The notes below the pieces were generated by a model that saw nothing but the letters and a program-made list of their open reading frames with translations, had not been told where the DNA came from and searched no databases. Below are positions 8,909-24,541 of a DNA stretch of 64,000 nt, piece after piece (within the stretch, counting starts at the first letter, position 1; each line of letters begins with the position of its first letter). Made by a program: the position numbers and the translations under genes. The stretch lies in the IMG/VR virus record IMGVR_UViG_3300027759_004177, positions 62,001 through 126,000 of that record; one strand, 5' to 3'.

Positions 8909-9871
8909 TTATTTCTTCACAATAGATTGCATGGTGTTGAAAACTTTTTGTTGATTTTCCAACAGCATTTCTCTTGTGCCACCAAATGGTGCTGATGCCA
9001 ATGGTCCTAATCTTTTTTGGATTTCTGGATCGCTAAAACCTTTGGCCAACACCAGATATAAATCTCTGACTATGTGGTCAGGTGTTCCGGCTGGTGCCCA
9101 AACTCCAAAAATCGAAGATAACACAAAATTTGGATGATTTTTATTCAACCACACGGCCTTGGTTGCTGGAGGATTGAATTTATTGGCCATGTCTACCCCT
9201 GCTGGGTCAAATGCTCCAATGATTTTTAATTTTCCTGCTTTGACATGTGATTCCGGAACAGAAATGCTGTCAACTGCTATTTTGACATGGCCTCCCAGCA
9301 CATCGGTCAACACTGGACCAGATCCTTTGTAAACTATAAAATTGGGTTCTGGTAGTTTTTCTAGTTCTGCCCATTTTTTGTAGATTGGGGCCATGATGGC
9401 ACTGAATATGCCAATGTCAAACTTTTTGGGGTTTTGTTTTGCCCATGCAACAAATTCTGCATAGTTGTTGAAAGGTGCATCAGCACTGGCATATAAAACC
9501 TGGATACTTGGCACCACTGGAAAAACTGGTACGACACTTTTTGCGGTGTAAGTGGCAGTGGAATCATTTACTAGTCCTGTGTTAAAACTGGCAGTGGCCA
9601 CTACCATGAGATTGTGCCCGTCGGGTTCGGCTTTGGCAAAGTGGTTCATGCCAATCACACCACCAGCACCAGCCATGTTGGTCGTCACTGATTTCCAACC
9701 GTGTTTTTCAAGTATTTCGCTGGTCAGCCGTGCAATAACATCGTTGCTACCGCCCACGGGCCATGGAGTCATGACATCAATGGTTTTGGTAGGTTTGAAA
9801 TTTTGAGCAGATGCTAGGCCGACTGTTAAACCCAGTATCAGAGCGGCAAAGATTTTTGTGATTTTTTTCAT
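8909..9871 (-). CDS. Bug/TctC tripartite tricarboxylate transporter substrate-binding protein
   Basis: signal peptide; PWPVGGSNDVIAR, N.AGAGGVIG, PDGHNL, YKGSGP..TDVLGG, APAGTP. Confidence 0.9.
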   Translation of the reverse strand: MKKITKIFAALILGLTVGLASAQNFKPTKTIDVMTPWPVGGSNDVIARLTSEILEKHGWKSVTTNMAGAGGVIGMNHFAKAEPDGHNLMVVATASFNTGLVNDSTATYTAKSVVPVFPVVPSIQVLYASADAPFNNYAEFVAWAKQNPKKFDIGIFSAIMAPIYKKWAELEKLPEPNFIVYKGSGPVLTDVLGGHVKIAVDSISVPESHVKAGKLKIIGAFDPAGVDMANKFNPPATKAVWLNKNHPNFVLSSIFGVWAPAGTPDHIVRDLYLVLAKGFSDPEIQKRLGPLASAPFGGTREMLLENQQKVFNTMQSIVKK

Positions 9872-10012
9872 AGAAAGATCCTTTGATTTAGAAAATGTGT
9901 AACTAGATATAAGTTTACACTGAGCTAATAAAAAATGCAAGTGGAAAAGCAGAACTTTGGTGAAGTTTCAGCGGAACTTTGCTGTAACTAATTTTATTTA
10001 GCTTTTGGCAAT

Positions 10013-10033
10013 AAAAAAGCCCCCGGAGGGGCT
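10013..10033 (-). terminator. terminator ending tmRNA transcript
   Basis: AGCCCC-tccg-GGGGCTTTTTT on minus strand. Confidence 0.8.
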
Positions 10034-10034
10034 G

Positions 10035-10350
10035 GTGGTTTCTGTTACGAGGTATTTCCTACCCTAGGCGCTGTTAGGCGGCCAATGCGAACTGTTCGTC
10101 GTTTGCGTTTACGTTGTTTGCTTTTTACGAGTACTCCTCTCGTGTTGCCATCTCTTCTAGCTCACCATGTCGAAACTGTTTCATCCCCATCAAAAAGGCT
10201 CTTGACAATCCAGAATAGATAGTTGGCAACAACTGCTATGCCCCAGAGATAAATCCAATGCCAGTCGTTAAACATAAAAGTCCTTTTGGTGGAGATGCTG
10301 GGTTCTGCCCCCAGGTCCACAGCGCCTTCGATTTGAAGGAATTACAACAA
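10035..10350 (-). ncRNA. ssrA: two-piece (circularly permuted) tmRNA; tag (A)ANDEQFALAA
   Basis: acceptor piece ends CUGGG-GGCAGAA-CCCAG-CAUCUCC-ACCA at 10287; coding piece starts GGGGAUG at 10188 (G3:U70 pair); tag frame 10106..10074; outer ends approximate. Confidence 0.92.
10162..10275 (-). CDS. putative 37-aa membrane peptide in the tmRNA intervening segment
   Basis: AAGGA SD; MFNDWHWIYLWGIAVVANYLFWIVKSLFDGDETVSTW. Confidence 0.45.
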   Translation of the reverse strand: MFNDWHWIYLWGIAVVANYLFWIVKSLFDGDETVSTW

Positions 10351-10369
10351 TATCGTTATTATATACTTA

Positions 10370-11167
10370 TTAAGTTTCTGCGTCAACCTTGGGTTTGGTA
10401 CGCCATTTTGCCAATTCGGATTCAAACTTTTGTTCTAGATCTGCGGTGATAACGGCCTGATCAACCTGTTGTCTTAGTTCATTAGCAAACGTTTCCAATT
10501 GGCCAATGTCGCCCATGTACTTGAACGTGTCTGTGACACGTCTAGTATCGTACGCATCCATGATTATGTGATAGCGGTCCTGATTTGAATCATTGCGAAT
10601 TTGATGCCAGACATTTACCCAAACCATGTAGGCCGTACCAGGTTCCATATACAACGTTTCTCCTTCGGCTGTGAAGGTACATGCAGGATTTGTAATCAGG
10701 GGTATGTGGATACGTGCCATATATTGGTTTTCACCACAATCTCTATGCACCAGACTCTTGCTACCAGCCTTCAGACAAGTTACCCTGGCTCGACGTGGTG
10801 TCAACCCAAATGCCTCAATTTGATCGATGGTCCGAGCAATCTCACCGCAATAGCCCTGTGTGGGTTTCTTGTATTCTAACGAATGTGCAATGTTAAAATA
10901 TTTCAAGGTAGTGTAATTGTTGGCATTTTTAGGAAAGAATACTTCTTCGATAGTGGTGCCTTCTTCGTTTTGAAAAAATTCCCAACCGTCTTGCCAGGCA
11001 CCAGTTTGACTCTGCAAACTCCATCCGCCAAATCCTTTATAGGCATCGGTTTCATATTCTTCGCCTTGCACGACTTGATTGCCCAAAGTAAACACATGAT
11101 TTTTTACATCGGCTACTAACCGGTCATGATCGTATTTGATAAAATTTAATTTTTCATAGAATGACAT
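10370..11167 (-). CDS. aspartyl/asparaginyl beta-hydroxylase-like Fe/2OG oxygenase
   Basis: VHRD...RIHIPLITN...WHQIRNDS..DRYHII. Confidence 0.8.
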   Translation of the reverse strand: MSFYEKLNFIKYDHDRLVADVKNHVFTLGNQVVQGEEYETDAYKGFGGWSLQSQTGAWQDGWEFFQNEEGTTIEEVFFPKNANNYTTLKYFNIAHSLEYKKPTQGYCGEIARTIDQIEAFGLTPRRARVTCLKAGSKSLVHRDCGENQYMARIHIPLITNPACTFTAEGETLYMEPGTAYMVWVNVWHQIRNDSNQDRYHIIMDAYDTRRVTDTFKYMGDIGQLETFANELRQQVDQAVITADLEQKFESELAKWRTKPKVDAET

Positions 11168-11176
11168 CGTACATCC

Positions 11177-11776
11177 TTATAGTGTATTTTTAAATGCTTG
11201 AGCAGCACTTTTATCAAATGTGCCCATGTTACTGGTTACGGATATCCTGGCCTGGCTGGAACAATTGGGTTCTACCATGTGTAATACAAACCCTGGAAAG
11301 AATACCAGTTTACCTTCTGCAGGCTGAATGCGACTAAACTTTGTGCCGTTAACGCCATCATTTCCTGAATCCCAGTCGCATCCATTGCGAGGATCTATTA
11401 GCAATAAGTCACCACAGTTTTCAGGAGCCTTAACATAATAGGTCATTGCAATCTTGGGGCTACCATGTCCATGTATGGGCATACCTTGACCAGGTCGGTG
11501 ATAGTTTATCCAGCCACGAGCATGCCAGAATTCAAATTCCTTGACAGTTGGTGCTATGTAATCGTATGTCTGTGCTTTGACTATTTTGATAGTGTAGTTT
11601 TTTAGTTCTTGTACTCGGGGACTATCGCAGTTCCAAATATTAGAGTTGCCAGCGTCGGCTTCAGGATCACAATATTGGCCAATTTCGTCAAGTAGTTCGT
11701 TGTTGAATTGTTCGTCAAAGTCGGTTTGTATTTCCCACACAGGGGTCACCCACATGTCTGTTTTAGTTATTTTCAT
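11177..11776 (-). CDS. putative 2OG-Fe(II) oxygenase (TIGR02466-like)
   Basis: WINYH...HGH...YYV...DPR...EGKLVFFP..LHMV.PN...RISV. Confidence 0.85.
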   Translation of the reverse strand: MKITKTDMWVTPVWEIQTDFDEQFNNELLDEIGQYCDPEADAGNSNIWNCDSPRVQELKNYTIKIVKAQTYDYIAPTVKEFEFWHARGWINYHRPGQGMPIHGHGSPKIAMTYYVKAPENCGDLLLIDPRNGCDWDSGNDGVNGTKFSRIQPAEGKLVFFPGFVLHMVEPNCSSQARISVTSNMGTFDKSAAQAFKNTL

Positions 11777-12471
11777 TTGAATTGAACCAAGTTGAGTCGA
11801 TTTAAAATCTGCAGATAGTAGAATCCCAAATCAAATTCATTTTTATTTACAGCCATGTTACACAGCCTGCTGTCTCTATGGTGATTGTTGTGTAGTTCTT
11901 CACCAACACACAGTATGCCTACAGGAACAACATTACGAGTATAGTCGCCTAGGTCAAAATTTTTGTAACCGATGCTATGACCAAATACTGTTATTGTTGC
12001 GATTGTTAAAAAATTTACCACAAACAAATGTACAATCCATACGAGAATTCCCAACCAACCAAACAACAGCATGTTGATTAACAATAACAATACAACTCCC
12101 AGTCTTGGATGCCGATCAATAACGGTGTCGGTAGATGCTTCCGCACAGTATCTATGATATTCTTGATCAGAAACTGTTATTTTATACGATCGAAAGAAAC
12201 TTGGAACTAGACAGCACCGCAACAAAGACCAAAAACCAAATCTAGGAGTATGAGGATCATTGTATGAATCCGAGAACTCGTGATGCTTTCTATGTTGTAC
12301 CACAAACTCTCGAGTAACCACATCAAACAAGATCCAATACATGATCTTCATTGCGGTTTCTACTCGCGGAGTCAGGTTGTATTGTCTGTGTATCATATAT
12401 CGATGCATGTACAGGGAAGCCAGCACACAGCCCAGGTGTATGGTCACAATGGTATAGATCAACATCAACAT
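11773..12471 (-). CDS. membrane fatty acid desaturase (delta-9 type)
   Basis: His boxes HRYMIH, HRKHH, HNNHH; TM segments. Confidence 0.85.
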   Translation of the reverse strand: MLMLIYTIVTIHLGCVLASLYMHRYMIHRQYNLTPRVETAMKIMYWILFDVVTREFVVQHRKHHEFSDSYNDPHTPRFGFWSLLRCCLVPSFFRSYKITVSDQEYHRYCAEASTDTVIDRHPRLGVVLLLLINMLLFGWLGILVWIVHLFVVNFLTIATITVFGHSIGYKNFDLGDYTRNVVPVGILCVGEELHNNHHRDSRLCNMAVNKNEFDLGFYYLQILNRLNLVQFK

Positions 12472-12992
12472 AGATTCAATATTTCTAAAACTTGATCATA
12501 CCCTAAATCGTTGGCAGAAACTTGTAAAAACTTTCTTGGCAAACAATTTGTAGAATCAACTCCATGGATGACCTTGCCGTTTAAAATGTACACATCTCCT
12601 GGATAGGCAACAAAACTATCTATTGGTTCTAATTCTTCTATGCGATATGCATGTCCATCACCGTGATCTGCGTAGGTAAACTTTGAAGCATTTTCCGTGC
12701 TTTTGTAAAATGTGGTTCGGTAGTCACCTGTTTCTATGTAGAAATTAATATTGACTTGGTCAACAATATCTGTATGTGGCGGCACTGAGGTTTCTATGTT
12801 AACAAAACTTGTGTAAAAATGTCGACTGTATTCACCAAGTGAAGCGATAAAACGGTCTACGTAATTGGAAGTGACATTAAAGTACTGTATTTTGTTGCCA
12901 TGCGTATCTAATTCAAATTCTATCCGTTTATCTAGAATTTCAAAATCAATGTCGGCAGACGCAGAAAGTTTTTTAAATCGAGAATGAACCAT
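12465..12992 (-). CDS. putative Fe/2OG-oxygenase-like protein
   Basis: PPHTD...INFY...IHGV; start uncertain (12992 or 13022). Confidence 0.6.
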   Translation of the reverse strand: MVHSRFKKLSASADIDFEILDKRIEFELDTHGNKIQYFNVTSNYVDRFIASLGEYSRHFYTSFVNIETSVPPHTDIVDQVNINFYIETGDYRTTFYKSTENASKFTYADHGDGHAYRIEELEPIDSFVAYPGDVYILNGKVIHGVDSTNCLPRKFLQVSANDLGYDQVLEILNLC

Positions 12993-13539
12993 ATTGTCGT
13001 AAAGATTCGTATACTGTTTCATAAGAAAGATCTGTAGTAAACGACAGGGCTTCTCTGTAGTTGGTTTTACTGAGTCCTTCTACGCTGTGTATCTTGCGAA
13101 TATTTAAAAGATATATGTCATGCTTGCGGGCCACAAATTGATCTTCTAACGCCAGATTATCGAGTTTGTAACTGCACTGACATTCTCCAGCACAAAACTT
13201 CTCTACTGTACACTCTGCACATGAAACTGGTTTGGGCTTGGTAAACTCTTCAGACTTTACAGAGAAGAACCGAGTCGGGCAGTTGTTTTCGCTCAGGTAT
13301 ATGTTTATTCTACAACCTATGTCTAGATCCACATGTGGATGTGCATTGTCACCAATGAATGTCATGTAGCTGAGATTAAAATTCTGCTTCAAGTGATCTG
13401 GCAACAGGATATTTCTGCTCAGGTTGGTACGGTAGTATCTGGTCCATCCGCCACCGCAAACGTGTTGTTCGCCCAGGTTTTCAAAGTTGTTGTACAGGCT
13501 TGGACTAATACTATCTAACTTAGTATAGTACCGATTCAT
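12973..13539 (-). CDS. putative Fe/2OG-oxygenase-like protein with Cys-rich insert
   Basis: HPHVD...INIY...IHSV...R; CAEC...CAGECQC insert. Confidence 0.6.
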   Translation of the reverse strand: MNRYYTKLDSISPSLYNNFENLGEQHVCGGGWTRYYRTNLSRNILLPDHLKQNFNLSYMTFIGDNAHPHVDLDIGCRINIYLSENNCPTRFFSVKSEEFTKPKPVSCAECTVEKFCAGECQCSYKLDNLALEDQFVARKHDIYLLNIRKIHSVEGLSKTNYREALSFTTDLSYETVYESLRQYGSFSI

Positions 13540-13934
13540 AGACGTGATTGGAACTCCACCATGGGTGTGGTATCTATGCCTTCTGCCACTACCTGGTCCA
13601 CAGGCTCGGGTATGTTGCGTGCCTGGGCCCACTCTCGGTATTGTGCCACGATAGGACTGGGAGTGTAGTCTATTCCGTCATGCGGATTCTTTAGTGCGTC
13701 ATAAAATTCGTTGCCATACACGATGTAGTTTATCAAAGGATCGCCGGGTAGCAAAAACACTTTGTCTAATATGACCGGGTATTGGTGACACATCTCAAAG
13801 AAACTGTTTCGTTCATCCTCAGTGAGATTGAACACAATGGCGCCAACTTCGGTGTCTAAAAAATACTTGACATACCGGTTGTAATCTTCAGCATCAAAGT
13901 TAACTGGTTGTTTGCCTACAATAATATCGCTCAT
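13536..13934 (-). CDS. hypothetical protein
   Basis: ATGA overlaps on both sides in operon. Confidence 0.75.
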   Translation of the reverse strand: MSDIIVGKQPVNFDAEDYNRYVKYFLDTEVGAIVFNLTEDERNSFFEMCHQYPVILDKVFLLPGDPLINYIVYGNEFYDALKNPHDGIDYTPSPIVAQYREWAQARNIPEPVDQVVAEGIDTTPMVEFQSRL

Positions 13935-14569
13935 AAGTCCTTAATCCTTAACATACTGTTTATAAAACTTTTCAACACCAACCGATCTTTGCTGTCCTTG
14001 GTAAGGTCATGTTTAAAATCTGTAGTCAGGTTTACTCTACATCTCCCCAGGTTCATCTTGACTCCGTGTAGTACATATGATGGCAAAAATATCATGTCGC
14101 CATTTTTAGGGGTTATTGTTTTAATTTCAGTTCGGTGTTCACCGACTCGGCCGGTATCAACATAATAAAATTCACCACCAACATCTGGGCCCTGTATGTA
14201 GTAGCTACAGGCAATAGACGAATCAGGGTGTGCATGGAGTTCTATACGTTCTCCAGCTGTGTTTACATTAAGCCAGGCTCCCGACACAACAAATTCAGCT
14301 CGTTGTGTTGTTGGCATGTATTGATTGACAACCTCAGTGATTACCTCGGTCTTAAAATCAATCAATTCTTGTATACAGGGACTATCATAATCTAATAGAG
14401 ATTCTTTCCCTGAGGCTTCGTCAAACGTGCTGGCAATTTCGTAAAGTTCTCGTAACAACTCTTGATTAAATGATTCTGTAAACGGAGTCTTTTGGTGCCA
14501 CACCGGGCACTCCCACAACGAAGATTTCACACTACTGGCGAAAATACTTTCGTCAATGACCGTGGTCAT
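13931..14569 (-). CDS. putative 2OG-Fe(II) oxygenase (TIGR02466-like)
   Basis: WLNV...HAHP...YY...GDMIFLPSYVLHGV..N...R. Confidence 0.85.
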   Translation of the reverse strand: MTTVIDESIFASSVKSSLWECPVWHQKTPFTESFNQELLRELYEIASTFDEASGKESLLDYDSPCIQELIDFKTEVITEVVNQYMPTTQRAEFVVSGAWLNVNTAGERIELHAHPDSSIACSYYIQGPDVGGEFYYVDTGRVGEHRTEIKTITPKNGDMIFLPSYVLHGVKMNLGRCRVNLTTDFKHDLTKDSKDRLVLKSFINSMLRIKDL

Positions 14570-15474
14570 TTTGCAGCCCTTTGTCCCACACGTTTAAAAC
14601 CAAAGCCTTTAAAGAACGAATAGATTCCAGCACCCGCCAAGGAGGTGTAATAGCTTAGATAAAACAACGCCCACATGGTGTACAAGGTTGGCAAACGATG
14701 GCGGCGTGACTTTTTGCCAACACGTGGCAAGCTGTCAACAAATCGACAAATAGGTTTACCAATCTCCATCAAGATACGACCTTGAACATTGTCTTCGGGC
14801 AATGCACCCATCAAGTAGGCCATGTGTTCTGACCATGGCGTACCAATCTTGATGGCCATGTCCGTGATACGATCTTTTTGTCGTGCCGCACGTTTTTCTG
14901 GGTCAGTGATCCAGGGCATGTACACCGGTCCTTTGCCGTCCATCCAGGCAGTTACAATTCTTGCCCAACGCACATAGCCGCGATACACTCGGCGATCTTT
15001 TTTGCGTAGCCATTGCCCGTACATTTGATCCGCGGCCCAGATGTTTTGATTCATTAGACCAAAGTCGTATAACTTGGCACAAATAATCTTGGAGCAGTTG
15101 CAGGCACAGTTACAGGCATAAGATGTGGTTGTACTGGTACAGTTATATGTGCAGGCACAGTTACAGTTGTTCTGTAACCAACTCTGTGTGTCACAGTTGC
15201 CACAATTGATTTGACCAGTTATGAGACAATTTGTGCAATTTATGTTACCGCAGTTGCAATTTGCAGTACAGTTACCATTGGCACAGTTGGCGCCATCGGC
15301 AGTATTTTGGAAATAGGCTTTGTTATAAAATGCCGTCATACTGGGATTGGCCGGACGCTGGTCGCTACGAATTAATCCATTGAGGAAATTTAAATCTGTA
15401 GAGAAAGTGGCAGCCTGCCCAATTTCGGTGCTGACGTCGCCAACTGCAATTTGTCCGGATGCTGGTAGTGTCAT
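14566..15474 (-). CDS. Asn-Cys repeat protein: tail-tip-type N-terminus, NC-rich core, KIIC domain, C-terminal TM
   Basis: MTLPASGQIAVGDVSTEIG...SMTAFYNK; 16 Cys in aa 64-127, 13 as NC; hydrophobic then basic C-terminus. Confidence 0.8.
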   Translation of the reverse strand: MTLPASGQIAVGDVSTEIGQAATFSTDLNFLNGLIRSDQRPANPSMTAFYNKAYFQNTADGANCANGNCTANCNCGNINCTNCLITGQINCGNCDTQSWLQNNCNCACTYNCTSTTTSYACNCACNCSKIICAKLYDFGLMNQNIWAADQMYGQWLRKKDRRVYRGYVRWARIVTAWMDGKGPVYMPWITDPEKRAARQKDRITDMAIKIGTPWSEHMAYLMGALPEDNVQGRILMEIGKPICRFVDSLPRVGKKSRRHRLPTLYTMWALFYLSYYTSLAGAGIYSFFKGFGFKRVGQRAAK

Positions 15475-15486
15475 GGTAAATTCTCT

Positions 15487-16941
15487 TTATTGAGTATTTA
15501 TGACTGATTCCACCCGACTTTGACCATACACTTCAATTCCTTCGATCTCGCCAACTACTTCACTGACAATTTTGATAGGTATGACTCGTTTCTTTTCAGT
15601 TTCTGTGTGTTCATATATGGTACCAAACACGTCTTGCCGTTCCAAGGGCAACTCGTCCTGTTTGATCAGGGTGGGAATATAACCCGTTATTTTCTCTACA
15701 GCCAGGGCAAACAAGGCCACATTGTCCGAATAGCTGTTGGCACAGCTGACATCCCAGAATTCTTTGTCCAAGAACATGCAGGCACCTTTGCAAAGGTGTA
15801 GTACCGGGCACTTGGGACATTCAGCACGATTTGACCAGTGTGTTGATGTTTTGATAGCCACGTTGTCATAATCGTCTAAATTACCGCCCAAATGGCTTTC
15901 TCCGTTTTTGCCGGTTTCTAGACTGCTGACGTTTTGACAAGTCATCACATTACCACGCAGGTCGATTGCCAACACATGCTCGTCGTCCATGCCGCACTTT
16001 TGTCCTAAGAATTTGGATTCGTCGTGCGCCAGCACGTTTCTAATGAATCCATCGATCTTGTCCAACTGCATCTTGAATCCAATTTGTCCTTGTGTACTAA
16101 AAATATCAGCAAAGGCTGTGCGACGAAATTCAAAATGTTGCTGTTTGGTTTGCAGGCTGTTTTGCATGCCATCAGCATCGTAACTGTCTACAATGCCGCC
16201 TTCGCCCAGAGACACATTGGGGTCTCCTGTGAATTCCACAAACCAGTCATAAATCCGTTTTCTGCTGATGTTTTGTGCATTGAGCATGGGATTAAAGCTA
16301 AAGCCTTTTTTGAGTCTGCTCATCTGACGATAAAATCCCAGGATCTGTTTTTTCTTTTCGGGATCCGCAAACGGATCAGGTCCACGCACATGTTGTCCAG
16401 GACCATCGTGGCTGATTGATACTGTAAAGTTCAATTTCATTAGCCAATCAATTATTTCCTCATTGAGTATGCTGCCATTGGTAATCACACTGAACTGTGG
16501 TTTATGTTTCCAGCCACTAAATTTTTCCAAGATAGCTTCAGCCAAAGGTTTGAGTGTTTTCCAGTAAACAAATGGTTCTCCACCCCAGAACTCAATCTTG
16601 AGGCCTTGGGTTTCATCAAACTCTAGCACTTTGAATTTTTCTAAAAAAACGTCAATGTCTTTCTTTGAAGTTTCTGGAGCACGTTCCACGAACTTCTGTG
16701 AGCAGTAATCGCAAGAGTAATTACAGCTGAGTCCCAACTGTATCTTTAATAGCTGTATCGCACGGCTTTTCTTCAATGGACGATCGCGATCAAAAGCAAC
16801 ATATGGCTTCAAATTGTGTTTGTGTATCTGTGGATATTCAAATACCGTACCATCCTCACTTTTTAAAGTGTTGGTTTCGTTATCGTAATAAAAGATTTTT
16901 TTGTCTGCGGCTGAACGCTCAGCATGAATTTCAAATAGCAT
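15487..16941 (-). CDS. radical SAM/SPASM-domain maturase
   Basis: CNYSCDYC, FWGGEP, ITNG, SISHDG, CG...G.V..C and CPKCPVLHLCKGAC...C SPASM cysteines. Confidence 0.92.
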   Translation of the reverse strand: MLFEIHAERSAADKKIFYYDNETNTLKSEDGTVFEYPQIHKHNLKPYVAFDRDRPLKKSRAIQLLKIQLGLSCNYSCDYCSQKFVERAPETSKKDIDVFLEKFKVLEFDETQGLKIEFWGGEPFVYWKTLKPLAEAILEKFSGWKHKPQFSVITNGSILNEEIIDWLMKLNFTVSISHDGPGQHVRGPDPFADPEKKKQILGFYRQMSRLKKGFSFNPMLNAQNISRKRIYDWFVEFTGDPNVSLGEGGIVDSYDADGMQNSLQTKQQHFEFRRTAFADIFSTQGQIGFKMQLDKIDGFIRNVLAHDESKFLGQKCGMDDEHVLAIDLRGNVMTCQNVSSLETGKNGESHLGGNLDDYDNVAIKTSTHWSNRAECPKCPVLHLCKGACMFLDKEFWDVSCANSYSDNVALFALAVEKITGYIPTLIKQDELPLERQDVFGTIYEHTETEKKRVIPIKIVSEVVGEIEGIEVYGQSRVESVINTQ

Positions 16942-20412: not shown

Positions 20413-21707
20413 CGGGCACTGGCTACAAAACGTAGATCTCTACTGATTGTGGCCAACTCTTTTTTGCCTTGTGGTCCAGCTTTATGAACTGTGTCTTGAT
20501 CCACATAGGTATCAGGCTCATCAGCTGATGTTGGTTTTACATTCACTGGCTTGTCTGTGCGGGTGTCAAATCCGTGTATGTTTATGCTACGACCATAGCG
20601 ACGCTGTAGTTCTTGCCAAACACGTTGGCCACCTTCACTTTGTTTTTTGTCACTGACCAGGGTGATACCAAGTTGTAAAATTAAAAACGCATACAAGTCA
20701 GCGGCACGGTAGGTGTTCTTGGGTCCGGAGTATGTGCCCATTACCACAAAGCTATCTCGATTTTCAGAATATGAACGACCAGTGGTGGCCAACTGACTAA
20801 TGCGTGTTTCAGGATTGTACACATAGTATGTTGTTGTCCCGCGATCTTTCCAACTCCATAGCTCATATCCGCCGGGCATTTTGCTGACAAAGTCTGTTAA
20901 ATAGTCGGCTTCTTGACCGCGTGGAATAGGTCGACCATCATTGGGCATGACATCCAAGTGTTGGCGCTTGCTTTTGGCCACAGTGGGTACAGCAGTGATC
21001 TCATTGAGATTGTTGGTTAATTCGTACACAGTGGAACCTGCATAATCAGAAACGTCAACACTATATCCCCAGGTGGCGGCGTAACGCCGAACTAGTCGAT
21101 CATACAATTTAGCTCGGCTTTGATTGTTGTCGTCGTCGTCTTTGGTAGCACTGAAACGAATATGCTCTGGATGTTGCTTTTTAATAAACTGTTGTATTGC
21201 ACCTAATACGGTGGCAAACACTCGCTGTGCATCACCTTCGCCAGTTACGTCTTGGCTATTGTTTCTGTGGAACTCAATTTGATATTCGCCATCTTCTTCG
21301 CGGTTAAACATGATACTGAGATACGTGCCATCTGCTAAGGTAGCTAAAGCATCGTAGTCACCAAACTCACCCTTTTCCCATTTGACCGGGTAAGGTTGAT
21401 CAAACGCTTCCATTATGCCAGTGGCTCTGCGTAGTTGTAGATCAAAGTCCACATCGGACTCGTAACGGTTAATAAACCGTTCATAGTACTGTCGTGCTAG
21501 TGCAGGAGTATCAGCTTCAAAGCGATCTACTATCTGTGCGGATCCAGCAGGACGATCTGCGTGATAGATTTCATAACCTTTGTTGAGACGATCACGCACA
21601 CGAGCCATGTGATCCATACGGCGATCAACATGCTTGCCGGCGCCTTGTAGATAGCGTTGTAATGCTTCATCACTAATTTCGTCTAGGAATAATTCTGTAA
21701 TAAACAT
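20409..21707 (-). CDS. multidomain hypothetical protein, possible internal head protein
   Basis: start MFITELFLDE; modules separated by (I/L)xE sites (IMEAF, LNEIT). Confidence 0.7.
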   Translation of the reverse strand: MFITELFLDEISDEALQRYLQGAGKHVDRRMDHMARVRDRLNKGYEIYHADRPAGSAQIVDRFEADTPALARQYYERFINRYESDVDFDLQLRRATGIMEAFDQPYPVKWEKGEFGDYDALATLADGTYLSIMFNREEDGEYQIEFHRNNSQDVTGEGDAQRVFATVLGAIQQFIKKQHPEHIRFSATKDDDDNNQSRAKLYDRLVRRYAATWGYSVDVSDYAGSTVYELTNNLNEITAVPTVAKSKRQHLDVMPNDGRPIPRGQEADYLTDFVSKMPGGYELWSWKDRGTTTYYVYNPETRISQLATTGRSYSENRDSFVVMGTYSGPKNTYRAADLYAFLILQLGITLVSDKKQSEGGQRVWQELQRRYGRSINIHGFDTRTDKPVNVKPTSADEPDTYVDQDTVHKAGPQGKKELATISRDLRFVASAR

Positions 21708-24541
21708 TATGTACTCATCTTGGGTCTGCAACTGAATGCACTTGGATCTTCTGCGCCAATGTTGCGTAACCAACCTTGAGCCTGTGTCCAAGCACTGGTT
21801 TGGTCATGGTCAGCAAATTCGTGGACCACATGTCCTGAATCACGTTCATATATTTGCCACATAGGAACACCATTTGGTGCAGTTACCTGTACAGGATCGC
21901 CTGCACGGTATACCAAAGTAGCATCATCTCGACCAGTCAATTGTTCTATGTAGCGTTTTACTTCAATGGCAATACTTCTGTTATTGTCAGAGGCCGCCGC
22001 TGTTGATACATATCCGTAGATCCTATCGCCGGATTTAACTTCATAATAGTCGCCGGTTGCAGGACGTTGTGTTGAGAATCCTGCAGGGGGCTGATCACCT
22101 GTCTGTGGATTGATGTGGTTTGCCAACTGATCTCGCCAAGGAGGCGTATCTGTAAAGTTCTGAGCAACGTCAGGTTCGGCATCCTTGTCTGCCTGTTGTG
22201 CTCGTATTTCTAAATTGTCAGCATTTTCAAAATCGTGTAGTGTGGCCACTTGCTTTAATAGTTTTTCGGCTTGTTCTCGATCAACTCGTTTAATAGTATC
22301 AATCACACGACCTGTTGGTGTGTAAACAACGTCCCAGTCTTGTTTTTGCTTGTTGGGATCCTTAGGTATCTCTTCAATAGCAAGACGACCTTGTGGTAGT
22401 TTTTGCTCACGTTCAAATTTACGCATAGCTTGTACTAAACCACTCTTACGACCTTCTTGTTCGTAGTGTACTTCGCCAGTCTTGGTATCGTATACTTTCC
22501 AGTTTTTAATTTCTTCGGCTGGGGCTGCTTTGATATTTTTAGCAAGACGCTCACGCTTGGTCAACTCTGGTTCTGGTGCTTCTGGATCTGCTGGACGTAA
22601 GTTAAACCCAATACCTTGATCAGCATATTTGTCGTATACACTATCAGCGGCTGCACCTTTGGTTTCAAACCCATTCAAGATTTCCAATGTTTCTCCGGTG
22701 TTAACATTGTATACTTCCCAGTCACCTGACTCAGAATTTGATGGCAAGAATTTATACTCCTGTTGGAAACCTTCCATACTGCCGCCAGGACTTATCTTTT
22801 GCTTGGCTCGTTCCCATGCTTCTGTTTTGGTATAGCCATTATAGGTCTGTCCCGGTACACGTTTGCCGTAGCTGTCGTACAAGACCCAGTCACCTTTGGG
22901 TTCTTTTTCCAACTGTTTTTCTGCCCAACTCTTTTTAAGATCCGTACTTGAAATTTCGCCGGCAGCAAAACGACTGAACAAATCCAACGCAGGATCACCT
23001 TCAGGTGGGCTGATCAATTTGTATAACTTCTTGTAGTATTCTTTGCGTTCAGCAGCAGGATTGGCTGCCACTGTCATGGCCTTGGCATAACGCATCAAGG
23101 TATTCTTCAGTCGGTTGATATCTTCAAAATAGTTTGAACCGCCAGCTGAGCGAAACTCAATGTACTTGGCGCCGCGTTCCAAGTGTGGCTTGGTACTGTC
23201 GTTGCCACCTTGTGGGTTGATACTGGTGTACTTGCCAAAGCCGTGATTGTTGATCTCTAAAGCCTTTTGTGCCAGCTCCAGTAAATTGTGACGCATTAAC
23301 TCTAATGCACCACCAATGGCTTCTTTGTTACCTCGCACACGTTGACGTATTTTTTTAATAGCAGCTTCGCAGAAGTGATTACCACTGCGACCAAAATCTT
23401 TTAGTACGTGTTCGTCACCCAAGAACAGGGCCAGCTTGACATAATCAACTTGCCCACCTGTGACCGGTAAACTGACACCCATATGGAATCCGGTTGAACT
23501 ATTACTGTAAGCACCGTTTGATTCAGCCCACTCAAAGAAGTTTTCCATTTGACGCAAACATTCTTCCAATGGCATAGGCGGACTCACAATCTCCACTGGC
23601 ATGTTGTCTGAATCGTCGGCATCTAAACTCATGTCTGGTTCAAAGATCCAAGTTTCATCATCACGACGAGCAGAGTGATATCCGCCCGACACCTTGGTCT
23701 TGACACCCAGTTCCTCACTCAAACTCTTTGCCAACTCTCTAGCATTGTCTTCGCTGAAGCCGCCTTCACTGCTTTGACCAGTGTAAGTTATTACCGGCCA
23801 CATCAATTGGAATTCACTGGCGATGTCACTCATCCAACGCAGGCCAACATCACTAAAGAAACCTGAGTCATCGTCCACATAAAAATCATCGCGGAACTCA
23901 TCTAGTGCTTGATCGTAGTACCCGTCTTGATCCTTGATACTTTGTTCAACATCTTCTTCAAGTATTTCTTCCGCCCCTTCTACTGCTTCAACGTAAAGTT
24001 TGTAGTCAGGATTTGATTTAATATAAGCATCAGCTTCGGCACTGGTATCAAACTTTGGTGCTGCCTCGCCAACTGCTTGTATGCGGTCGGCTTCTCTATC
24101 GTCCATGTCCATGCCTTCGACCAAATAGTCGTGTATACGTTCGGTCATTGGGCGTTCGTCTACCCAAATTTTACGTACAAGATCTTCAGCTTCGTCACGG
24201 AATGCACGGTACATTTGATCATCGTGCCATTCCATGTACTTTTCATCTAGGCCATCTTGCAAGCTGTCTAGGTCACGACCGTATGTAGCATAGCCATATT
24301 CATCGTTACTGAAAAAGTCTATGACTTGTTGTACGCTGTTGGCACGTTCGTCGGCATCGTAGTCGGGTTCTGGATCTTCGTCGTACTCGGCTTCACCGCC
24401 TAAGCCTGTAAACACCAGTTCGGCTTCAAAGCCAGCACGTATGCCTTCGGCTTCGGGACTGGCGGCAAAAGCACGAAGACTGCCCGGGCTCATGCGTAGT
24501 TCGTCTAGTTGTTGTTCAGAAAGTAGCTCTTTGTATCGCAT
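21707..24541 (-). CDS. putative amidoligase (COOH-NH2 ligase type 2) with C-terminal repeats
   Basis: GFEAE, EPDMSL, EIVSPP, STGFHMGVS, KYTSIN, IEFRS motifs. Confidence 0.8.
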   Translation of the reverse strand: MRYKELLSEQQLDELRMSPGSLRAFAASPEAEGIRAGFEAELVFTGLGGEAEYDEDPEPDYDADERANSVQQVIDFFSNDEYGYATYGRDLDSLQDGLDEKYMEWHDDQMYRAFRDEAEDLVRKIWVDERPMTERIHDYLVEGMDMDDREADRIQAVGEAAPKFDTSAEADAYIKSNPDYKLYVEAVEGAEEILEEDVEQSIKDQDGYYDQALDEFRDDFYVDDDSGFFSDVGLRWMSDIASEFQLMWPVITYTGQSSEGGFSEDNARELAKSLSEELGVKTKVSGGYHSARRDDETWIFEPDMSLDADDSDNMPVEIVSPPMPLEECLRQMENFFEWAESNGAYSNSSTGFHMGVSLPVTGGQVDYVKLALFLGDEHVLKDFGRSGNHFCEAAIKKIRQRVRGNKEAIGGALELMRHNLLELAQKALEINNHGFGKYTSINPQGGNDSTKPHLERGAKYIEFRSAGGSNYFEDINRLKNTLMRYAKAMTVAANPAAERKEYYKKLYKLISPPEGDPALDLFSRFAAGEISSTDLKKSWAEKQLEKEPKGDWVLYDSYGKRVPGQTYNGYTKTEAWERAKQKISPGGSMEGFQQEYKFLPSNSESGDWEVYNVNTGETLEILNGFETKGAAADSVYDKYADQGIGFNLRPADPEAPEPELTKRERLAKNIKAAPAEEIKNWKVYDTKTGEVHYEQEGRKSGLVQAMRKFEREQKLPQGRLAIEEIPKDPNKQKQDWDVVYTPTGRVIDTIKRVDREQAEKLLKQVATLHDFENADNLEIRAQQADKDAEPDVAQNFTDTPPWRDQLANHINPQTGDQPPAGFSTQRPATGDYYEVKSGDRIYGYVSTAAASDNNRSIAIEVKRYIEQLTGRDDATLVYRAGDPVQVTAPNGVPMWQIYERDSGHVVHEFADHDQTSAWTQAQGWLRNIGAEDPSAFSCRPKMST

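What the first reader, a model, noticed from the sequence alone, without database searches (positions are those of the whole stretch)
14566..15474. Three-part substrate architecture: anchor, NC core, and KIIC domain with TM tail
Seen: residues 1-55 resemble the recurring N-terminal module of small phage tail-tip proteins. The Cys core (DNA 15094..15285) ends abruptly at SKIICAKLY, which is followed by a helical domain (RGY.RWA), a hydrophobic helix and a basic tail. Inference: the C-terminal domain resembles CFI-box-CTERM-like modules and may be a cleavable processing or membrane-tethering domain that releases the matured core.
Basis: partly seen in the sequence, partly recalled or inferred. 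Interest (0 to 1): 0.65.

Follow-up and report, generated by a model that had tools for sequence, protein, structure and literature searches.

The report
Radical-SAM-linked Asn-Cys repeat phage protein
This freshwater phage gene encodes a three-part protein whose asparagine-cysteine repeat is very probably cross-linked by the radical SAM enzyme next door; hundreds of other phages put the same kind of repeat at the tips of their tail fibres, and its C-terminal domain belongs to a large family with no annotation in the libraries searched.

Summary
The ORF is real but lies on the minus strand (14566-15474, 302 aa). The three parts hold up.

- **N-terminal module (1-58):** conserved and moderately well folded.
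- **Asn-Cys core (59-128):** 16 Cys and 16 Asn, with 13 NC dipeptides against 3.7±1.5 in shuffles.
- **Helical 'KIIC' domain (129-302):** ends in an uncharged helix and a basic tail.

A SPASM radical SAM gene accompanies the ORF in 73 of 73 testable related phage loci. More distant orthologues of that enzyme sit 0.8-3 kb downstream of proteins carrying an (xC)n repeat in 54 of 59 loci. Seven of ten such proteins tested match tail-fibre families. The repeat is C-terminal in 51 loci and directly followed by a self-cleaving Hint module in 3.

The KIIC domain occurs in at least 1,077 protein clusters, and was C-terminal in all 150 listed. It has an invariant Cys (C132 here) and no Pfam, NCBIfam, PHROG or PDB match.

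The CFI-box-CTERM resemblance and the 'recurring tail-tip N-module' are not supported. Cleavage of the C-domain is plausible by comparison but unproven.

Best reading: a protein substrate of radical SAM cross-linking, related to a tail-fibre-tip modification system for which I found no description.

The parts
14566..15474 (-). Whole ORF, 302 aa plus stop: the Asn-Cys-rich protein with a C-terminal KIIC domain.
   Evidence: ORF listing. 417 full-length homologues at 90% clustering. The start is fixed by invariant M1 and nearly invariant T2. It lies 12 nt after the rSAM stop, and its TGA overlaps the next gene's ATG as ATGA.
15301..15474 (-). N-terminal module, residues 1-58 (MTLPASGQIAVGDVSTEIG ... 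FYNKAYFQ).
   Evidence: Conserved in the family. AF2 pLDDT is 66-82 per 10-residue block (76-82 over residues 1-50), with short helices and a strand at 52-55 paired with 99-102. No family hit and no paralogue in the genome. The first ~20 aa are shared with P0210 and P0204.
15091..15300 (-). Asn-Cys core, residues 59-128. Two NC-rich blocks (63-94 and 103-127) flank a conserved D-x-Q-x-W-L-Q island. There are six conserved NxxC motifs, and the core ends in the (xC)4 repeat ACNCACNC.
   Evidence: Composition and shuffle test. Invariant Cys and Asn columns. AF2 pLDDT below 50. The motif NCNCG-x-h-NC is shared with (xC)n tails of tail-fibre proteins. hhalign matches only the terminal repeat.
14701..15090 (-). 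KIIC domain, helical part, residues 129-258. Invariant across the superfamily: C132, D149, G166, Y167, G239.
   Evidence: Profile search found 1,077 clusters, C-terminal in all 150 listed. Alignment A4. AF2 pLDDT 90.7, pTM 0.82. No Pfam hit in 112 members. No PDB match by sequence or Foldseek. Only uncharacterised viral homologues in BFVD and the Atlas.
14569..14700 (-). Basic stretch (RVGKKSRRHR), an uncharged aromatic-rich helix (about 262-288) and a basic tail (KRVGQRAAK), residues 259-302.
   Evidence: AF2 helix 261-290. Kyte-Doolittle maximum is 0.99 here. Median is 1.72 in 150 relatives, and 91 of them reach 1.6 or more.
15487..16941 (-). Radical SAM / SPASM enzyme, 484 aa: the presumed modifying enzyme.
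   Evidence: Pfam Radical_SAM 6.5e-10. SPASM TIGR04085 scores 33.2 bits against a cutoff of 27. Best named relative is PapB at 2e-22, below its cutoff. phrog_1802 at 2e-66. C73/C77/C80 and 7 SPASM Cys are invariant. Present in 73 of 73 testable loci and adjacent in 64.
13931..14569 (-). 2OG-Fe(II) oxygenase (2OG-FeII_Oxy_5), translationally coupled to the ORF.
   Evidence: Pfam 1.7e-10. ATGA overlap. A homologue lies downstream in 63 of 73 loci.
10370..13934 (-). Rest of the conserved cassette: 132-aa unknown (13536-13934); two paralogous unknowns (12973-13632, 12465-13022); fatty-acid-desaturase-like protein (11773-12471); second 2OG oxygenase (11177-11776); Asp/Asn beta-hydroxylase (10370-11167).
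   Evidence: Pfam and NCBIfam. Collinear in IMG/VR and metagenome relatives.

Best explanation
The ORF encodes the protein substrate of the adjacent SPASM-type radical SAM enzyme, in a conserved cassette of a 357-kb freshwater phage.

**Shown**
- The three-part anatomy.
- Strict gene linkage to the enzyme.
- The NC-repeat nature of the core.
- More distant orthologues of the enzyme accompany proteins, mostly tail-fibre-like, that end in the same kind of (xC)n repeat.
- The C-terminal domain is an independent, widespread phage domain with an invariant Cys.

**Inferred**
1. The enzyme binds Cys thiols on its auxiliary Fe-S clusters and cross-links them to nearby residues. The most likely products are beta-thioethers from Cys to the Asn three residues upstream (NxxC, as in NxxcB). 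This would turn the disordered core into a rigid, redox-inert ladder.
2. The neighbouring 2OG oxygenases and the Asp/Asn hydroxylase may hydroxylate the many Asn residues.
3. The KIIC domain acts during maturation as a C-terminal assembly module, either a membrane tether or an oligomerisation nucleus. It is then probably removed at the S128/K129-C132 junction, leaving N-module plus core as a small protein of about 13 kDa whose C-terminal tip is the cross-linked repeat, as in tail-fibre relatives.
For: **Linkage to the enzyme**
- The rSAM is present in 73 of 73 IMG/VR loci with enough upstream DNA. It is adjacent in 64; in all 9 others a desaturase homologue lies between the two genes.
- The same cassette appears in metagenome contigs L003 and L006.
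- Spacing suggests one operon: a 12-nt gap upstream and an ATGA overlap downstream.

**The enzyme**
- It has the CX3CX2C motif plus 7 invariant SPASM Cys.
- Its nearest named relatives are Cys-peptide cross-linkers such as PapB, CcpM and SCIFF maturases.

**The core**
- 13 NC dipeptides against 3.7±1.5 in shuffles.
- 79% of core Cys across the family follow Asn.
- Six NxxC motifs fall on conserved Asn and Cys columns.
- The residues before Cys are N >> A > Q > D. Ala, Gln and Asp are the other acceptor residues that NxxcB tolerates besides Asn (PMC9389541).

**Generalisation**
- At least 571 IMG/VR stretches encode relatives of the enzyme.
- 54 of 59 testable loci have an upstream (xC)>=4 ORF. 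The repeat is C-terminal in 51 and followed by Hint in 3.
- 7 of 10 such ORFs hit tail-fibre PHROGs, down to 2e-70.
- Cultured phages JWF and RSP15 carry the enzyme inside their tail-fibre modules. JWF gp028 reads NCNCDCNCNCSC|FPAGTMVLMADG.
- L009 has paralogues with and without KIIC after the repeat.

**Precedent and other support**
- A SPASM rSAM installs ranthionines on a whole Cys-rich protein, CrpC acting on CrpA (PMC13692751).
- KIIC is always C-terminal, after poly-Gly, poly-Pro, NC or Hint linkers.
- RNA-library contigs lie on the ORF, though this is weak evidence.
Against: - There is no chemical evidence for any cross-link.
- The complex prediction of enzyme with residues 1-135 gave no verdict.
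- No RRE-like recognition domain was detected in the enzyme, and it reaches no curated NCBIfam equivalog cutoff.
- In this subfamily the cassette sits among oxygenase and replication genes, not in a tail module.
- The ORF itself hits no tail-fibre family.
- No member of the subfamily naturally lacks KIIC. KIIC appears at least as conserved as the N-module and core across the family alignments, and no protease is in the cassette.
- The hydrophobic helix is weak here, with a Kyte-Doolittle maximum of 0.99.
- CxxC pairs (C80/C83, C91/C94) and CxC runs could equally bind metal.
Confidence: 0.5

Rival explanations
1. The NC core is a metal-binding module holding Zn, Fe or an Fe-S cluster. Alternate Cys would face one side of a strand and chelate ions, possibly along a trimer axis, as metal sites do in T4 fibre proteins. 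The radical SAM enzyme would then do something else, such as cluster delivery or modification of another substrate.
For: - There are two CxxC pairs (80/83 and 91/94), and relatives expand these into long CxxC runs.
- CxC runs dominate the tails.
- AF2 cannot fold the core without a ligand.
- HxH iron sites in T4 gp37 are cited from my own knowledge.
Against: - Linkage to a SPASM enzyme, whose characterised relatives cross-link Cys-rich peptides, is very tight: 73 of 73 and 54 of 59 loci.
- Asn before Cys is conserved as strongly as Cys itself, which metal binding alone does not explain.
- Metal sites need no dedicated enzyme.
Confidence: 0.17
2. This is a classical RiPP. The N-terminus is a leader, the core is the product, and the KIIC domain is a follower or tether. 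The matured core would be cut free on both sides and released as a bioactive peptide.
For: - The enzyme's nearest named relatives are RiPP maturases.
- The core is disordered in the model.
- The cassette carries several tailoring oxygenases.
Against: - No protease, transporter or RRE was detected in the cassette.
- The N-module is folded and pairs with the conserved W-L-Q island inside the core.
- In relatives the repeat is the tail of proteins of 89-726 aa; of ten tested, seven match tail-fibre families.
- The N-termini of those relatives are unrelated to one another, so they are not a common leader.
Confidence: 0.08
3. The protein is not processed. It works full length as a tail-anchored protein at the inner membrane of the infected cell, for example in exclusion, lysis timing or as an assembly platform. 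The cross-linked core would be its cytoplasmic head.
For: - KIIC appears at least as conserved as the N-module and core, and is never absent in this subfamily.
- A C-terminal hydrophobic helix with flanking basic residues is a family feature.
- The cassette is not in a structural module.
Against: - The helix is weakly hydrophobic in this subfamily, at 0.99.
- Other KIIC carriers are giant baseplate- or fibre-like proteins: DUF4815 proteins, one beside a Gp8-like gene, and one next to cyanophage fibre genes.
- Relatives end at the repeat or place a Hint domain there.
Confidence: 0.18
4. The KIIC domain is itself an enzyme that uses its invariant Cys. It could be a thioester-forming or autoprocessing domain distantly like the NEL E3-ligase fold.
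For: - Cys132 and Asp149 are invariant in 112 diverse sequences.
- The four best VIA-align matches are all NEL domains (SlrP, SspH1, IpaH), with Z 8.0, 7.4, 5.2 and 5.1. The top two have rmsd about 3 A over about 107 residues.
Against: - Those Z values fall below the tool's own caution level for helical folds, and identity is only 5-6%.
- Foldseek finds no PDB match.
- No Pfam NEL hit appears in 112 members.
- There is no CxD motif and no invariant His.
Confidence: 0.06

Closest known systems
CrpA/CrpC of Methanococcus voltae: a SPASM radical SAM enzyme that installs ranthionine cross-links on a Cys-rich protein (PMC13692751)
   Same: A SPASM rSAM gene lies next to a gene for a Cys-rich protein rather than a short peptide. 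The enzyme has three Fe-S clusters, and here the matching Cys motifs are invariant.
   Different: The setting here is a phage. The substrate is an Asn-Cys repeat between a folded N-module and a helical C-domain. Relatives are tail fibres. No sequence relationship to Crp proteins was tested. The chemistry here is unproven.
NxxcA/NxxcB streptococcal RiPP: beta-thioether between Cys and Asn in an NxxC motif (PMC9389541)
   Same: There are six conserved NxxC motifs. Every NCNC unit contains one. The residues preceding Cys (N, A, Q, D) match the acceptor residues that NxxcB tolerates.
   Different: NxxcA is a short peptide with a single motif. Enzyme orthology was not tested. NCBIfam ranks PapB-like models highest, all below cutoff.
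PapB/freyrasin and other ranthipeptide, sactipeptide or SCIFF maturases
   Same: PapB is the best NCBIfam match (NF047865, 2e-22, residues 64-390). Both have the SPASM architecture and repeated Cys-containing motifs in the substrate.
   Different: The score is 79.8 bits against an equivalog cutoff of 340. The acceptor would be Asn rather than Asp or Glu. No RRE was detected. The substrate is a 302-aa protein.
C-terminal intramolecular chaperone / autocleavage (ICA, Peptidase_S74) domain of phage tailspikes and fibres, and of MyRF (PMC8326128)
   Same: Both are conserved C-terminal domains attached to very diverse fibre-like passengers. Both have a conserved nucleophile-type residue at the start of the domain. 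MyRF shows that such a domain can sit before a membrane anchor and release the passenger.
   Different: There is no sequence or fold match: Pfam finds nothing and Foldseek finds no PDB hit. KIIC is all-helical and has a conserved Cys rather than Ser. Cleavage has not been shown.
Hint / bacterial intein-like autoprocessing domains
   Same: In relatives a Hint module sits exactly at the junction discussed here. It follows the (xC)n repeat in JWF gp028, L119, L128 and L131, and it precedes KIIC in P0146, P0154, P0217 and P0230.
   Different: The window's protein has no Hint domain. The repeat runs straight into KIIC.

Membership tests
SPASM-domain radical SAM maturase (the neighbouring enzyme, 15487-16941) | CX3CX2C radical SAM cluster motif | tested here: met
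   Pfam Radical_SAM at 6.5e-10. C73, C77 and C80 are invariant in 22 orthologues.
SPASM-domain radical SAM maturase (the neighbouring enzyme, 15487-16941) | C-terminal SPASM domain with seven Cys for two auxiliary clusters | tested here: met
   TIGR04085 scores 33.2 bits against a cutoff of 27, over residues 316-391. C316, C335, C375, C378, C384, C388 and C400 are invariant.
SPASM-domain radical SAM maturase (the neighbouring enzyme, 15487-16941) | N-terminal RiPP recognition element that binds a leader peptide | tested here: inconclusive
   Only about 65 residues precede the radical SAM core, and no family matches them. The complex prediction gave no verdict.
PapB-family ranthipeptide maturase (NF047865) | Score at or above the curated equivalog cutoff | tested here: not met
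   79.8 bits against a cutoff of 340.
Anaerobic sulfatase maturase (TIGR03942), the annotation given to the JWF orthologue | Score at or above the curated cutoff | tested here: not met
   51.6 bits against a cutoff of 349.45. No sulfatase-type C/S-x-P-x-R motif is present in the substrate.
NxxC-type beta-thioether RiPP (NxxcA/NxxcB) | Conserved NxxC motif(s) in the substrate | tested here: met
   Six motifs, at N66, N72, N77, N103, N105 and N122, all on conserved Asn and Cys columns.
NxxC-type beta-thioether RiPP (NxxcA/NxxcB) | Cys-to-Asn beta-carbon thioether in the product | not testable with these tools
   Needs mass spectrometry or NMR on the modified protein.
RiPP precursor peptide | Short precursor made of a leader (or follower) and a core, with no folded domains | tested here: not met
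   The protein is 302 aa, with a folded N-module (pLDDT about 79) and a confidently folded 130-aa helical domain (pLDDT 90.7).
   No NCBIfam family matches the ORF at E<=0.1.
Peptidase_S74 / intramolecular chaperone autocleavage domain | Sequence or fold match to the family | tested here: not met
   No Pfam hit for the ORF or for 112 KIIC domains. No Foldseek match in the PDB.
NEL (IpaH/SspH/SlrP) E3-ligase fold | Fold match well above background, plus the catalytic CxD motif | tested here: inconclusive
   VIA-align Z of 8.0, 7.4, 5.2 and 5.1 for four NEL domains. This is below the tool's caution level for helical folds. Foldseek finds nothing. No CxD motif is present.
Tail-anchored membrane protein | A single C-terminal transmembrane helix of adequate hydrophobicity | tested here: inconclusive
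   The uncharged helix spans about 262-288, but its Kyte-Doolittle 19-residue maximum is only 0.99. Among relatives, 91 of 150 reach 1.6 or more.
Phage tail fibre protein | Match to a tail-fibre family, or a position in a tail module | tested here: not met
   The ORF has no PHROG hit, and its cassette lies among oxygenase and replication genes. The link comes only from (xC)n proteins beside orthologous enzymes; of ten tested, seven match tail-fibre families.

The most novel reading that the evidence does not exclude
Many phages post-translationally harden the C-terminal tip of their tail fibres. A dedicated SPASM radical SAM enzyme would convert a terminal (Asn/Ala-Cys)n repeat into a ladder of thioether rings. 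I found no described enzymatic covalent cross-link of a phage receptor-binding fibre in the papers searched. The KIIC domain would be a new Cys-dependent, self-removing assembly or tethering domain that plays the role Hint modules play in sister proteins. The window's protein would then be a free-standing, expanded version of such a tip.
Probability: 0.3. Interest if true: 0.85.

Novelty: new variant of a known kind. Interest (0 to 1): 0.74.

Why it matters
Radical SAM cross-linking of Cys-rich sequences is known for short peptides. It has only just been shown for one archaeal protein. If the reading here is right, the same chemistry is used widely by phages, on proteins most of which look like tail fibres.

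The scale is large. At least 571 IMG/VR stretches encode relatives of the enzyme, and cultured phages of Achromobacter and Ralstonia carry it too. This would be a new layer in how receptor-binding tips are built and stabilised, and it can be tested in culturable systems.

The work also defines a large domain family (KIIC, at least 1,077 clusters) with no annotation in Pfam, NCBIfam, PHROGs or the PDB. It sits at the C-terminus of very diverse phage proteins, among them giant DUF4815 proteins of up to about 1,750 aa, and it has an invariant Cys. Its role in assembly, tethering or self-processing is open.

Tried and rejected
- **Complex prediction.** The rSAM with residues 1-135 of the substrate scored 0.00 and gave no verdict. 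It counts neither for nor against binding.
- **Fold searches.**
  - Foldseek of the full-length and C-domain models against the PDB found nothing at E<=0.001.
  - A PDB sequence-profile search found only chance hits on the hydrophobic tail.
  - BFVD and the Atlas returned only uncharacterised viral homologues.
  - The feature search of the Atlas gave only unnamed viral clusters.
- **NEL E3-ligase similarity.** Kept as a lead only.
- **Pfam on all 112 KIIC domains.** No shared family.
- **DNA-level search.** 7 kb around the ORF found no match in cultured phages.
- **N-module searches.**
  - phmmer, HMM and a regular expression over the whole genome found nothing.
  - tblastn against cultured phages gave one hit at E=5.
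  - An HMM search over 2,699 ORFs of the second set of phage loci found nothing.
- **Small (xC)n proteins as homologues of N-module plus core.** BLASTP found no alignment. hhalign aligned only the terminal low-complexity repeat, at 56% probability. Homology beyond the repeat is therefore not claimed.
- **'Standalone' KIIC protein P0125.** It is an artefact of a scaffold gap (runs of X in L174). It is not evidence that the two halves work apart.
- **P0177 context.** It is cut upstream, so rSAM linkage could not be judged.
- **Literature.** Eight searches found no description of the rSAM/(xC)n tail-fibre link or of the KIIC domain. The library is open-access only, so an earlier description cannot be excluded.
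Full report
**What is there**

The finding's coordinates hold a 302-aa ORF on the minus strand, 14566..15474. The plus-strand reading is broken by stops. The window is bases 62001-126000 of a 356,865-bp IMG/VR virus record that CheckV rates as complete. Near-identical DNA occurs in freshwater and lake metagenomes from at least seven studies.

The protein matches nothing in Pfam, NCBIfam or PHROGs. It has 417 full-length homologues among 90%-identity clusters, down to about 55% identity among those listed. All keep the same three parts.

**Gene context**

The ORF sits in a minus-strand cassette:

| Coordinates | Product |
|---|---|
| 15487-16941 | radical SAM / SPASM enzyme |
| 14566-15474 | the ORF |
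| 13931-14569 | 2OG-Fe(II) oxygenase |
| 12465-13934 | three unknown proteins |
| 11773-12471 | fatty-acid-desaturase-like protein |
| 11177-11776 | second 2OG oxygenase |
| 10370-11167 | Asp/Asn beta-hydroxylase |

The ORF starts 12 nt after the enzyme's stop codon. Its own TGA overlaps the next gene's ATG as ATGA.

I tested linkage in 80 related IMG/VR loci, in which the ORF is 40-100% identical to the window's.
- The enzyme is present in all 73 loci with at least 1.5 kb of upstream DNA. It is directly adjacent in 64; in all 9 others a desaturase homologue lies between the two genes.
- An oxygenase homologue follows downstream in 63 of 73.
- Many of these loci are near-duplicates, so the counts overstate independence. 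They still span a wide identity range.
- Two metagenome contigs show the same order, one of them beside T4-type gp59 and gp32 genes.

**The core**

Residues 59-128 contain 16 Cys and 16 Asn out of 70.
- Thirteen of the Cys follow an Asn. Shuffles give 3.7±1.5 NC dipeptides, and none of 20,000 reaches 13.
- Across the family, 79% of core Cys follow Asn. The next most common preceding residues are Ala, Gln and Asp.
- Both the Cys and the Asn columns are invariant or nearly so. Six NxxC motifs fall on those conserved columns.
- A conserved D-x-Q-x-W-L-Q island splits the core into two NC blocks. AlphaFold pairs this island with the N-module.
- The rest of the core is modelled at pLDDT below 50.
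- Some relatives expand the core with extra CxxC and SYNC units.

**The enzyme and its wider family**

The enzyme has the CX3CX2C motif and seven invariant SPASM cysteines. Its best named relatives are Cys-peptide cross-linkers such as PapB, CcpM and the SCIFF maturase. It reaches none of their curated cutoffs.

Full-length orthologues at 35-47% identity occur in Ralstonia phage RSP15, in Achromobacter phages JWF and 2-1, and in metagenome contig L009. In RSP15, JWF and L009, whose neighbourhoods I examined, they lie in tail-fibre modules.
- JWF gp028 is a tail-fibre protein that reads ...NCNCDCNCNCSC followed directly by a Hint module (FPAGTMVLMADG).
- The RSP15 side-fibre protein ends ...NTNCQCGN.
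- L009 has three paralogous small proteins, directly downstream of a gene matching a tail-fibre family. One ends ...NCYTNCNC, one ends ...NCNCNCNCNCDCGGG, and one continues from the same repeat into a KIIC domain.

A scan of IMG/VR found at least 571 stretches encoding relatives of the enzyme. I examined 80 diverse loci from that scan.
- Of 59 loci with at least 2.5 kb upstream, 54 carry an upstream ORF on the same strand with an (xC)>=4 repeat.
- In 51 of these the repeat lies within 12 residues of the C-terminus.
- In the other 3 a Hint module follows it immediately.
- These ORFs are 89-726 aa long. Seven of ten tested match tail-fibre PHROGs, down to 2e-70.
- The motif NCNCG-x-h-NC is common to these tails and to residues 72-80 of the window's core.

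The enzyme family is therefore tied to (xC)n repeats, usually at the tips of tail-fibre-like proteins. The window's protein is an expanded, free-standing variant of that substrate.

**The C-terminal domain**

A profile of residues 127-302 found 1,077 clusters at 50% identity with E<=1e-3. In all 150 listed, the domain lies at the C-terminus, in proteins of 110-1,859 aa.
- Most carriers are not Cys-rich. Their N-terminal parts include DUF4815, Gly_rich_2, He_PIG and Hint domains.
- One DUF4815 carrier lies beside a gene with a faint Phage-Gp8 (baseplate wedge) Pfam hit.
- Only one phage among the 50,697 cultured-phage records has the domain. It is Synechococcus phage SynMITS9220M01, in a 616-aa protein next to fibre genes.
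- The segment before the domain is poly-Gly in 75 of 150 cases, NC-rich in 11 and poly-Pro in 6. In 5 it is the end of a Hint domain, '...VHN' (four complete proteins and one fragment).

Across 112 diverse domains the invariant residues are C132, D149, G166, Y167 and G239. C132 therefore belongs to this domain and not to the core.

With that alignment AlphaFold gives a confident all-helical model, at pLDDT 90.7 and pTM 0.82. Known-fold searches were negative or weak.
- Foldseek finds no PDB match.
- BFVD and the Atlas return only uncharacterised viral homologues.
- The exhaustive aligner ranks four NEL E3-ligase domains first, at Z 8.0 to 5.1. That is under the tool's own caution level for helical folds, and no CxD motif is present.
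- No Pfam family matches any of the 112 domains.

The terminal helix is clearly hydrophobic in 91 of 150 relatives but weak in this protein, with a Kyte-Doolittle maximum of 0.99. A bacterial lipoprotein subfamily of the domain lacks the helix altogether.

**The N-terminal module**

Residues 1-58 are conserved and modelled with moderate confidence. I could not confirm that they form a recurring tail-tip module.
- There is no paralogue in the genome.
- There is no family hit.
- Cultured phages give nothing significant.
- ORFs from 80 phage loci carrying orthologues of the enzyme give nothing.
- Two other KIIC proteins share the first ~20 residues, the motif LP-x-SG-x-I-x-x-x-D-I-x-x-E.

**How it most likely works**

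Three things are shown: the anatomy, the gene linkage, and the comparative pattern.

The rest is inferred. The enzyme probably cross-links core cysteines to nearby residues. NxxC-type beta-thioethers fit best, for two reasons.
[quoted passage not shown] Those are the same residues found before Cys here (PMC9389541).
- A SPASM enzyme acting on a whole Cys-rich protein now has a precedent (PMC13692751).

The oxygenases may hydroxylate Asn. This rests only on gene order. One paper reports the Asp/Asn hydroxylase as core to all pelagimyophages, so it may be independent of this cassette (PMC7029224).

Relatives end at the repeat or place a self-cleaving Hint module there. I therefore think the KIIC domain is a maturation module that is removed, analogous in role to the intramolecular chaperone/autocleavage domains of tailspikes (PMC8326128). 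It may tether the protein to the membrane or nucleate oligomers. This step is the weakest. There is no protease in the cassette, no natural KIIC-less variant in the subfamily, and no experimental datum.

The rivals are metal binding, a released RiPP peptide, an unprocessed membrane protein, and an enzymatic KIIC domain. They are listed with their tests.

**Expression**

Short contigs from three freshwater RNA libraries lie on the enzyme gene, on both halves of the ORF, and on the oxygenase gene, with few or no differences. Depth is low and DNA carry-over cannot be excluded.

**Novelty**

Eight literature searches found no description of the tail-fibre/radical-SAM/(xC)n link or of the KIIC domain. 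A pelagimyophage study notes radical SAM cassettes in the host-recognition cluster without interpreting them. A cyanophage paper lists a radical SAM maturase as an 'antibiotic synthesis' gene. The library holds open-access papers only.

I rate the finding as a new variant of a known kind. The enzymology is RiPP-like, but it is applied to phage proteins, most of them fibre-like, and it comes with a new C-terminal domain family.

Noticed in passing
window 10012-10400 (-): The phage encodes a permuted tmRNA of the betaproteobacterial type. Rfam RF01850 scores 144.5 bits (E 3e-44) and RF04321 scores 133.7 bits. ARAGORN reads the tag peptide as ANDEQFALAA. The gene overlaps the 3' end of the Asp/Asn hydroxylase gene by about 30 nt. 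It hints at a betaproteobacterial host.
   Followed up: partly
L111 3966-4982, L112 3960-4982, L115 4302-5309, L140 3967-4974 and others: In many tail-fibre-type loci a second ORF of about 338 aa lies directly upstream of the radical SAM gene. It carries a C-x2-C-x5-C-x3-C motif like that of SPASM/twitch domains. In L122 the upstream ORF (388 aa) carries a CX3CX2C motif instead. These loci may therefore use two Fe-S enzymes.
   Followed up: no
L009 8237-9001 and L013 4231-4953 (JWF gp029): The ~250-aa proteins just upstream of the radical SAM gene in L009 and JWF share a short motif, D-x-I-x-ALE-x-Q-x-DLLT-x-x-V-x-x-LI (pairwise E 8e-5). They match no PHROG. They may be a conserved accessory or assembly factor of the fibre-type cassette.
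   Followed up: partly
P0236, P0243, P0244, P0255 and similar (KIIC relatives): One subfamily of the KIIC domain ('AELHRQGLM') occurs in proteins with lipoprotein-type signal peptides and Flg_new repeats. It lacks the terminal hydrophobic helix and a middle segment. The domain is therefore probably not restricted to phages.
   Followed up: no
P0230, versus P0146, P0154 and P0217: Among the Hint-KIIC fusions, P0230 has Cys right after the terminal Asn ('VHN|C'), so it could splice like a true mini-intein. The others have Lys there ('VHN|K'), so they could only cleave.
   Followed up: no
window 47540-47848 (+): A 102-aa ORF with 22 Cys in 70 residues lies antisense to the 677-aa ORF at 46604-48637. 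It is probably a spurious reading of the opposite strand.
   Followed up: no
window 21707-24541 (-) and 8909-9940 (-): A 944-aa protein combines an Amidoligase_2 domain with a weak hit to a cap-snatching-endonuclease-like domain. A TctC-type solute-binding protein lies next to the cassette. A TctC gene also neighbours the KIIC protein P0177 in another contig.
   Followed up: no
window 12973-13632 (-): This unknown cassette protein carries a C-x2-C...C-x3-C-x-C cluster (CAECTVEKFCAGECQC) with a sub-threshold SPASM hit (E 0.052). It has a paralogue next door at 12465-13022 that weakly resembles an isoleucine dioxygenase.
   Followed up: no
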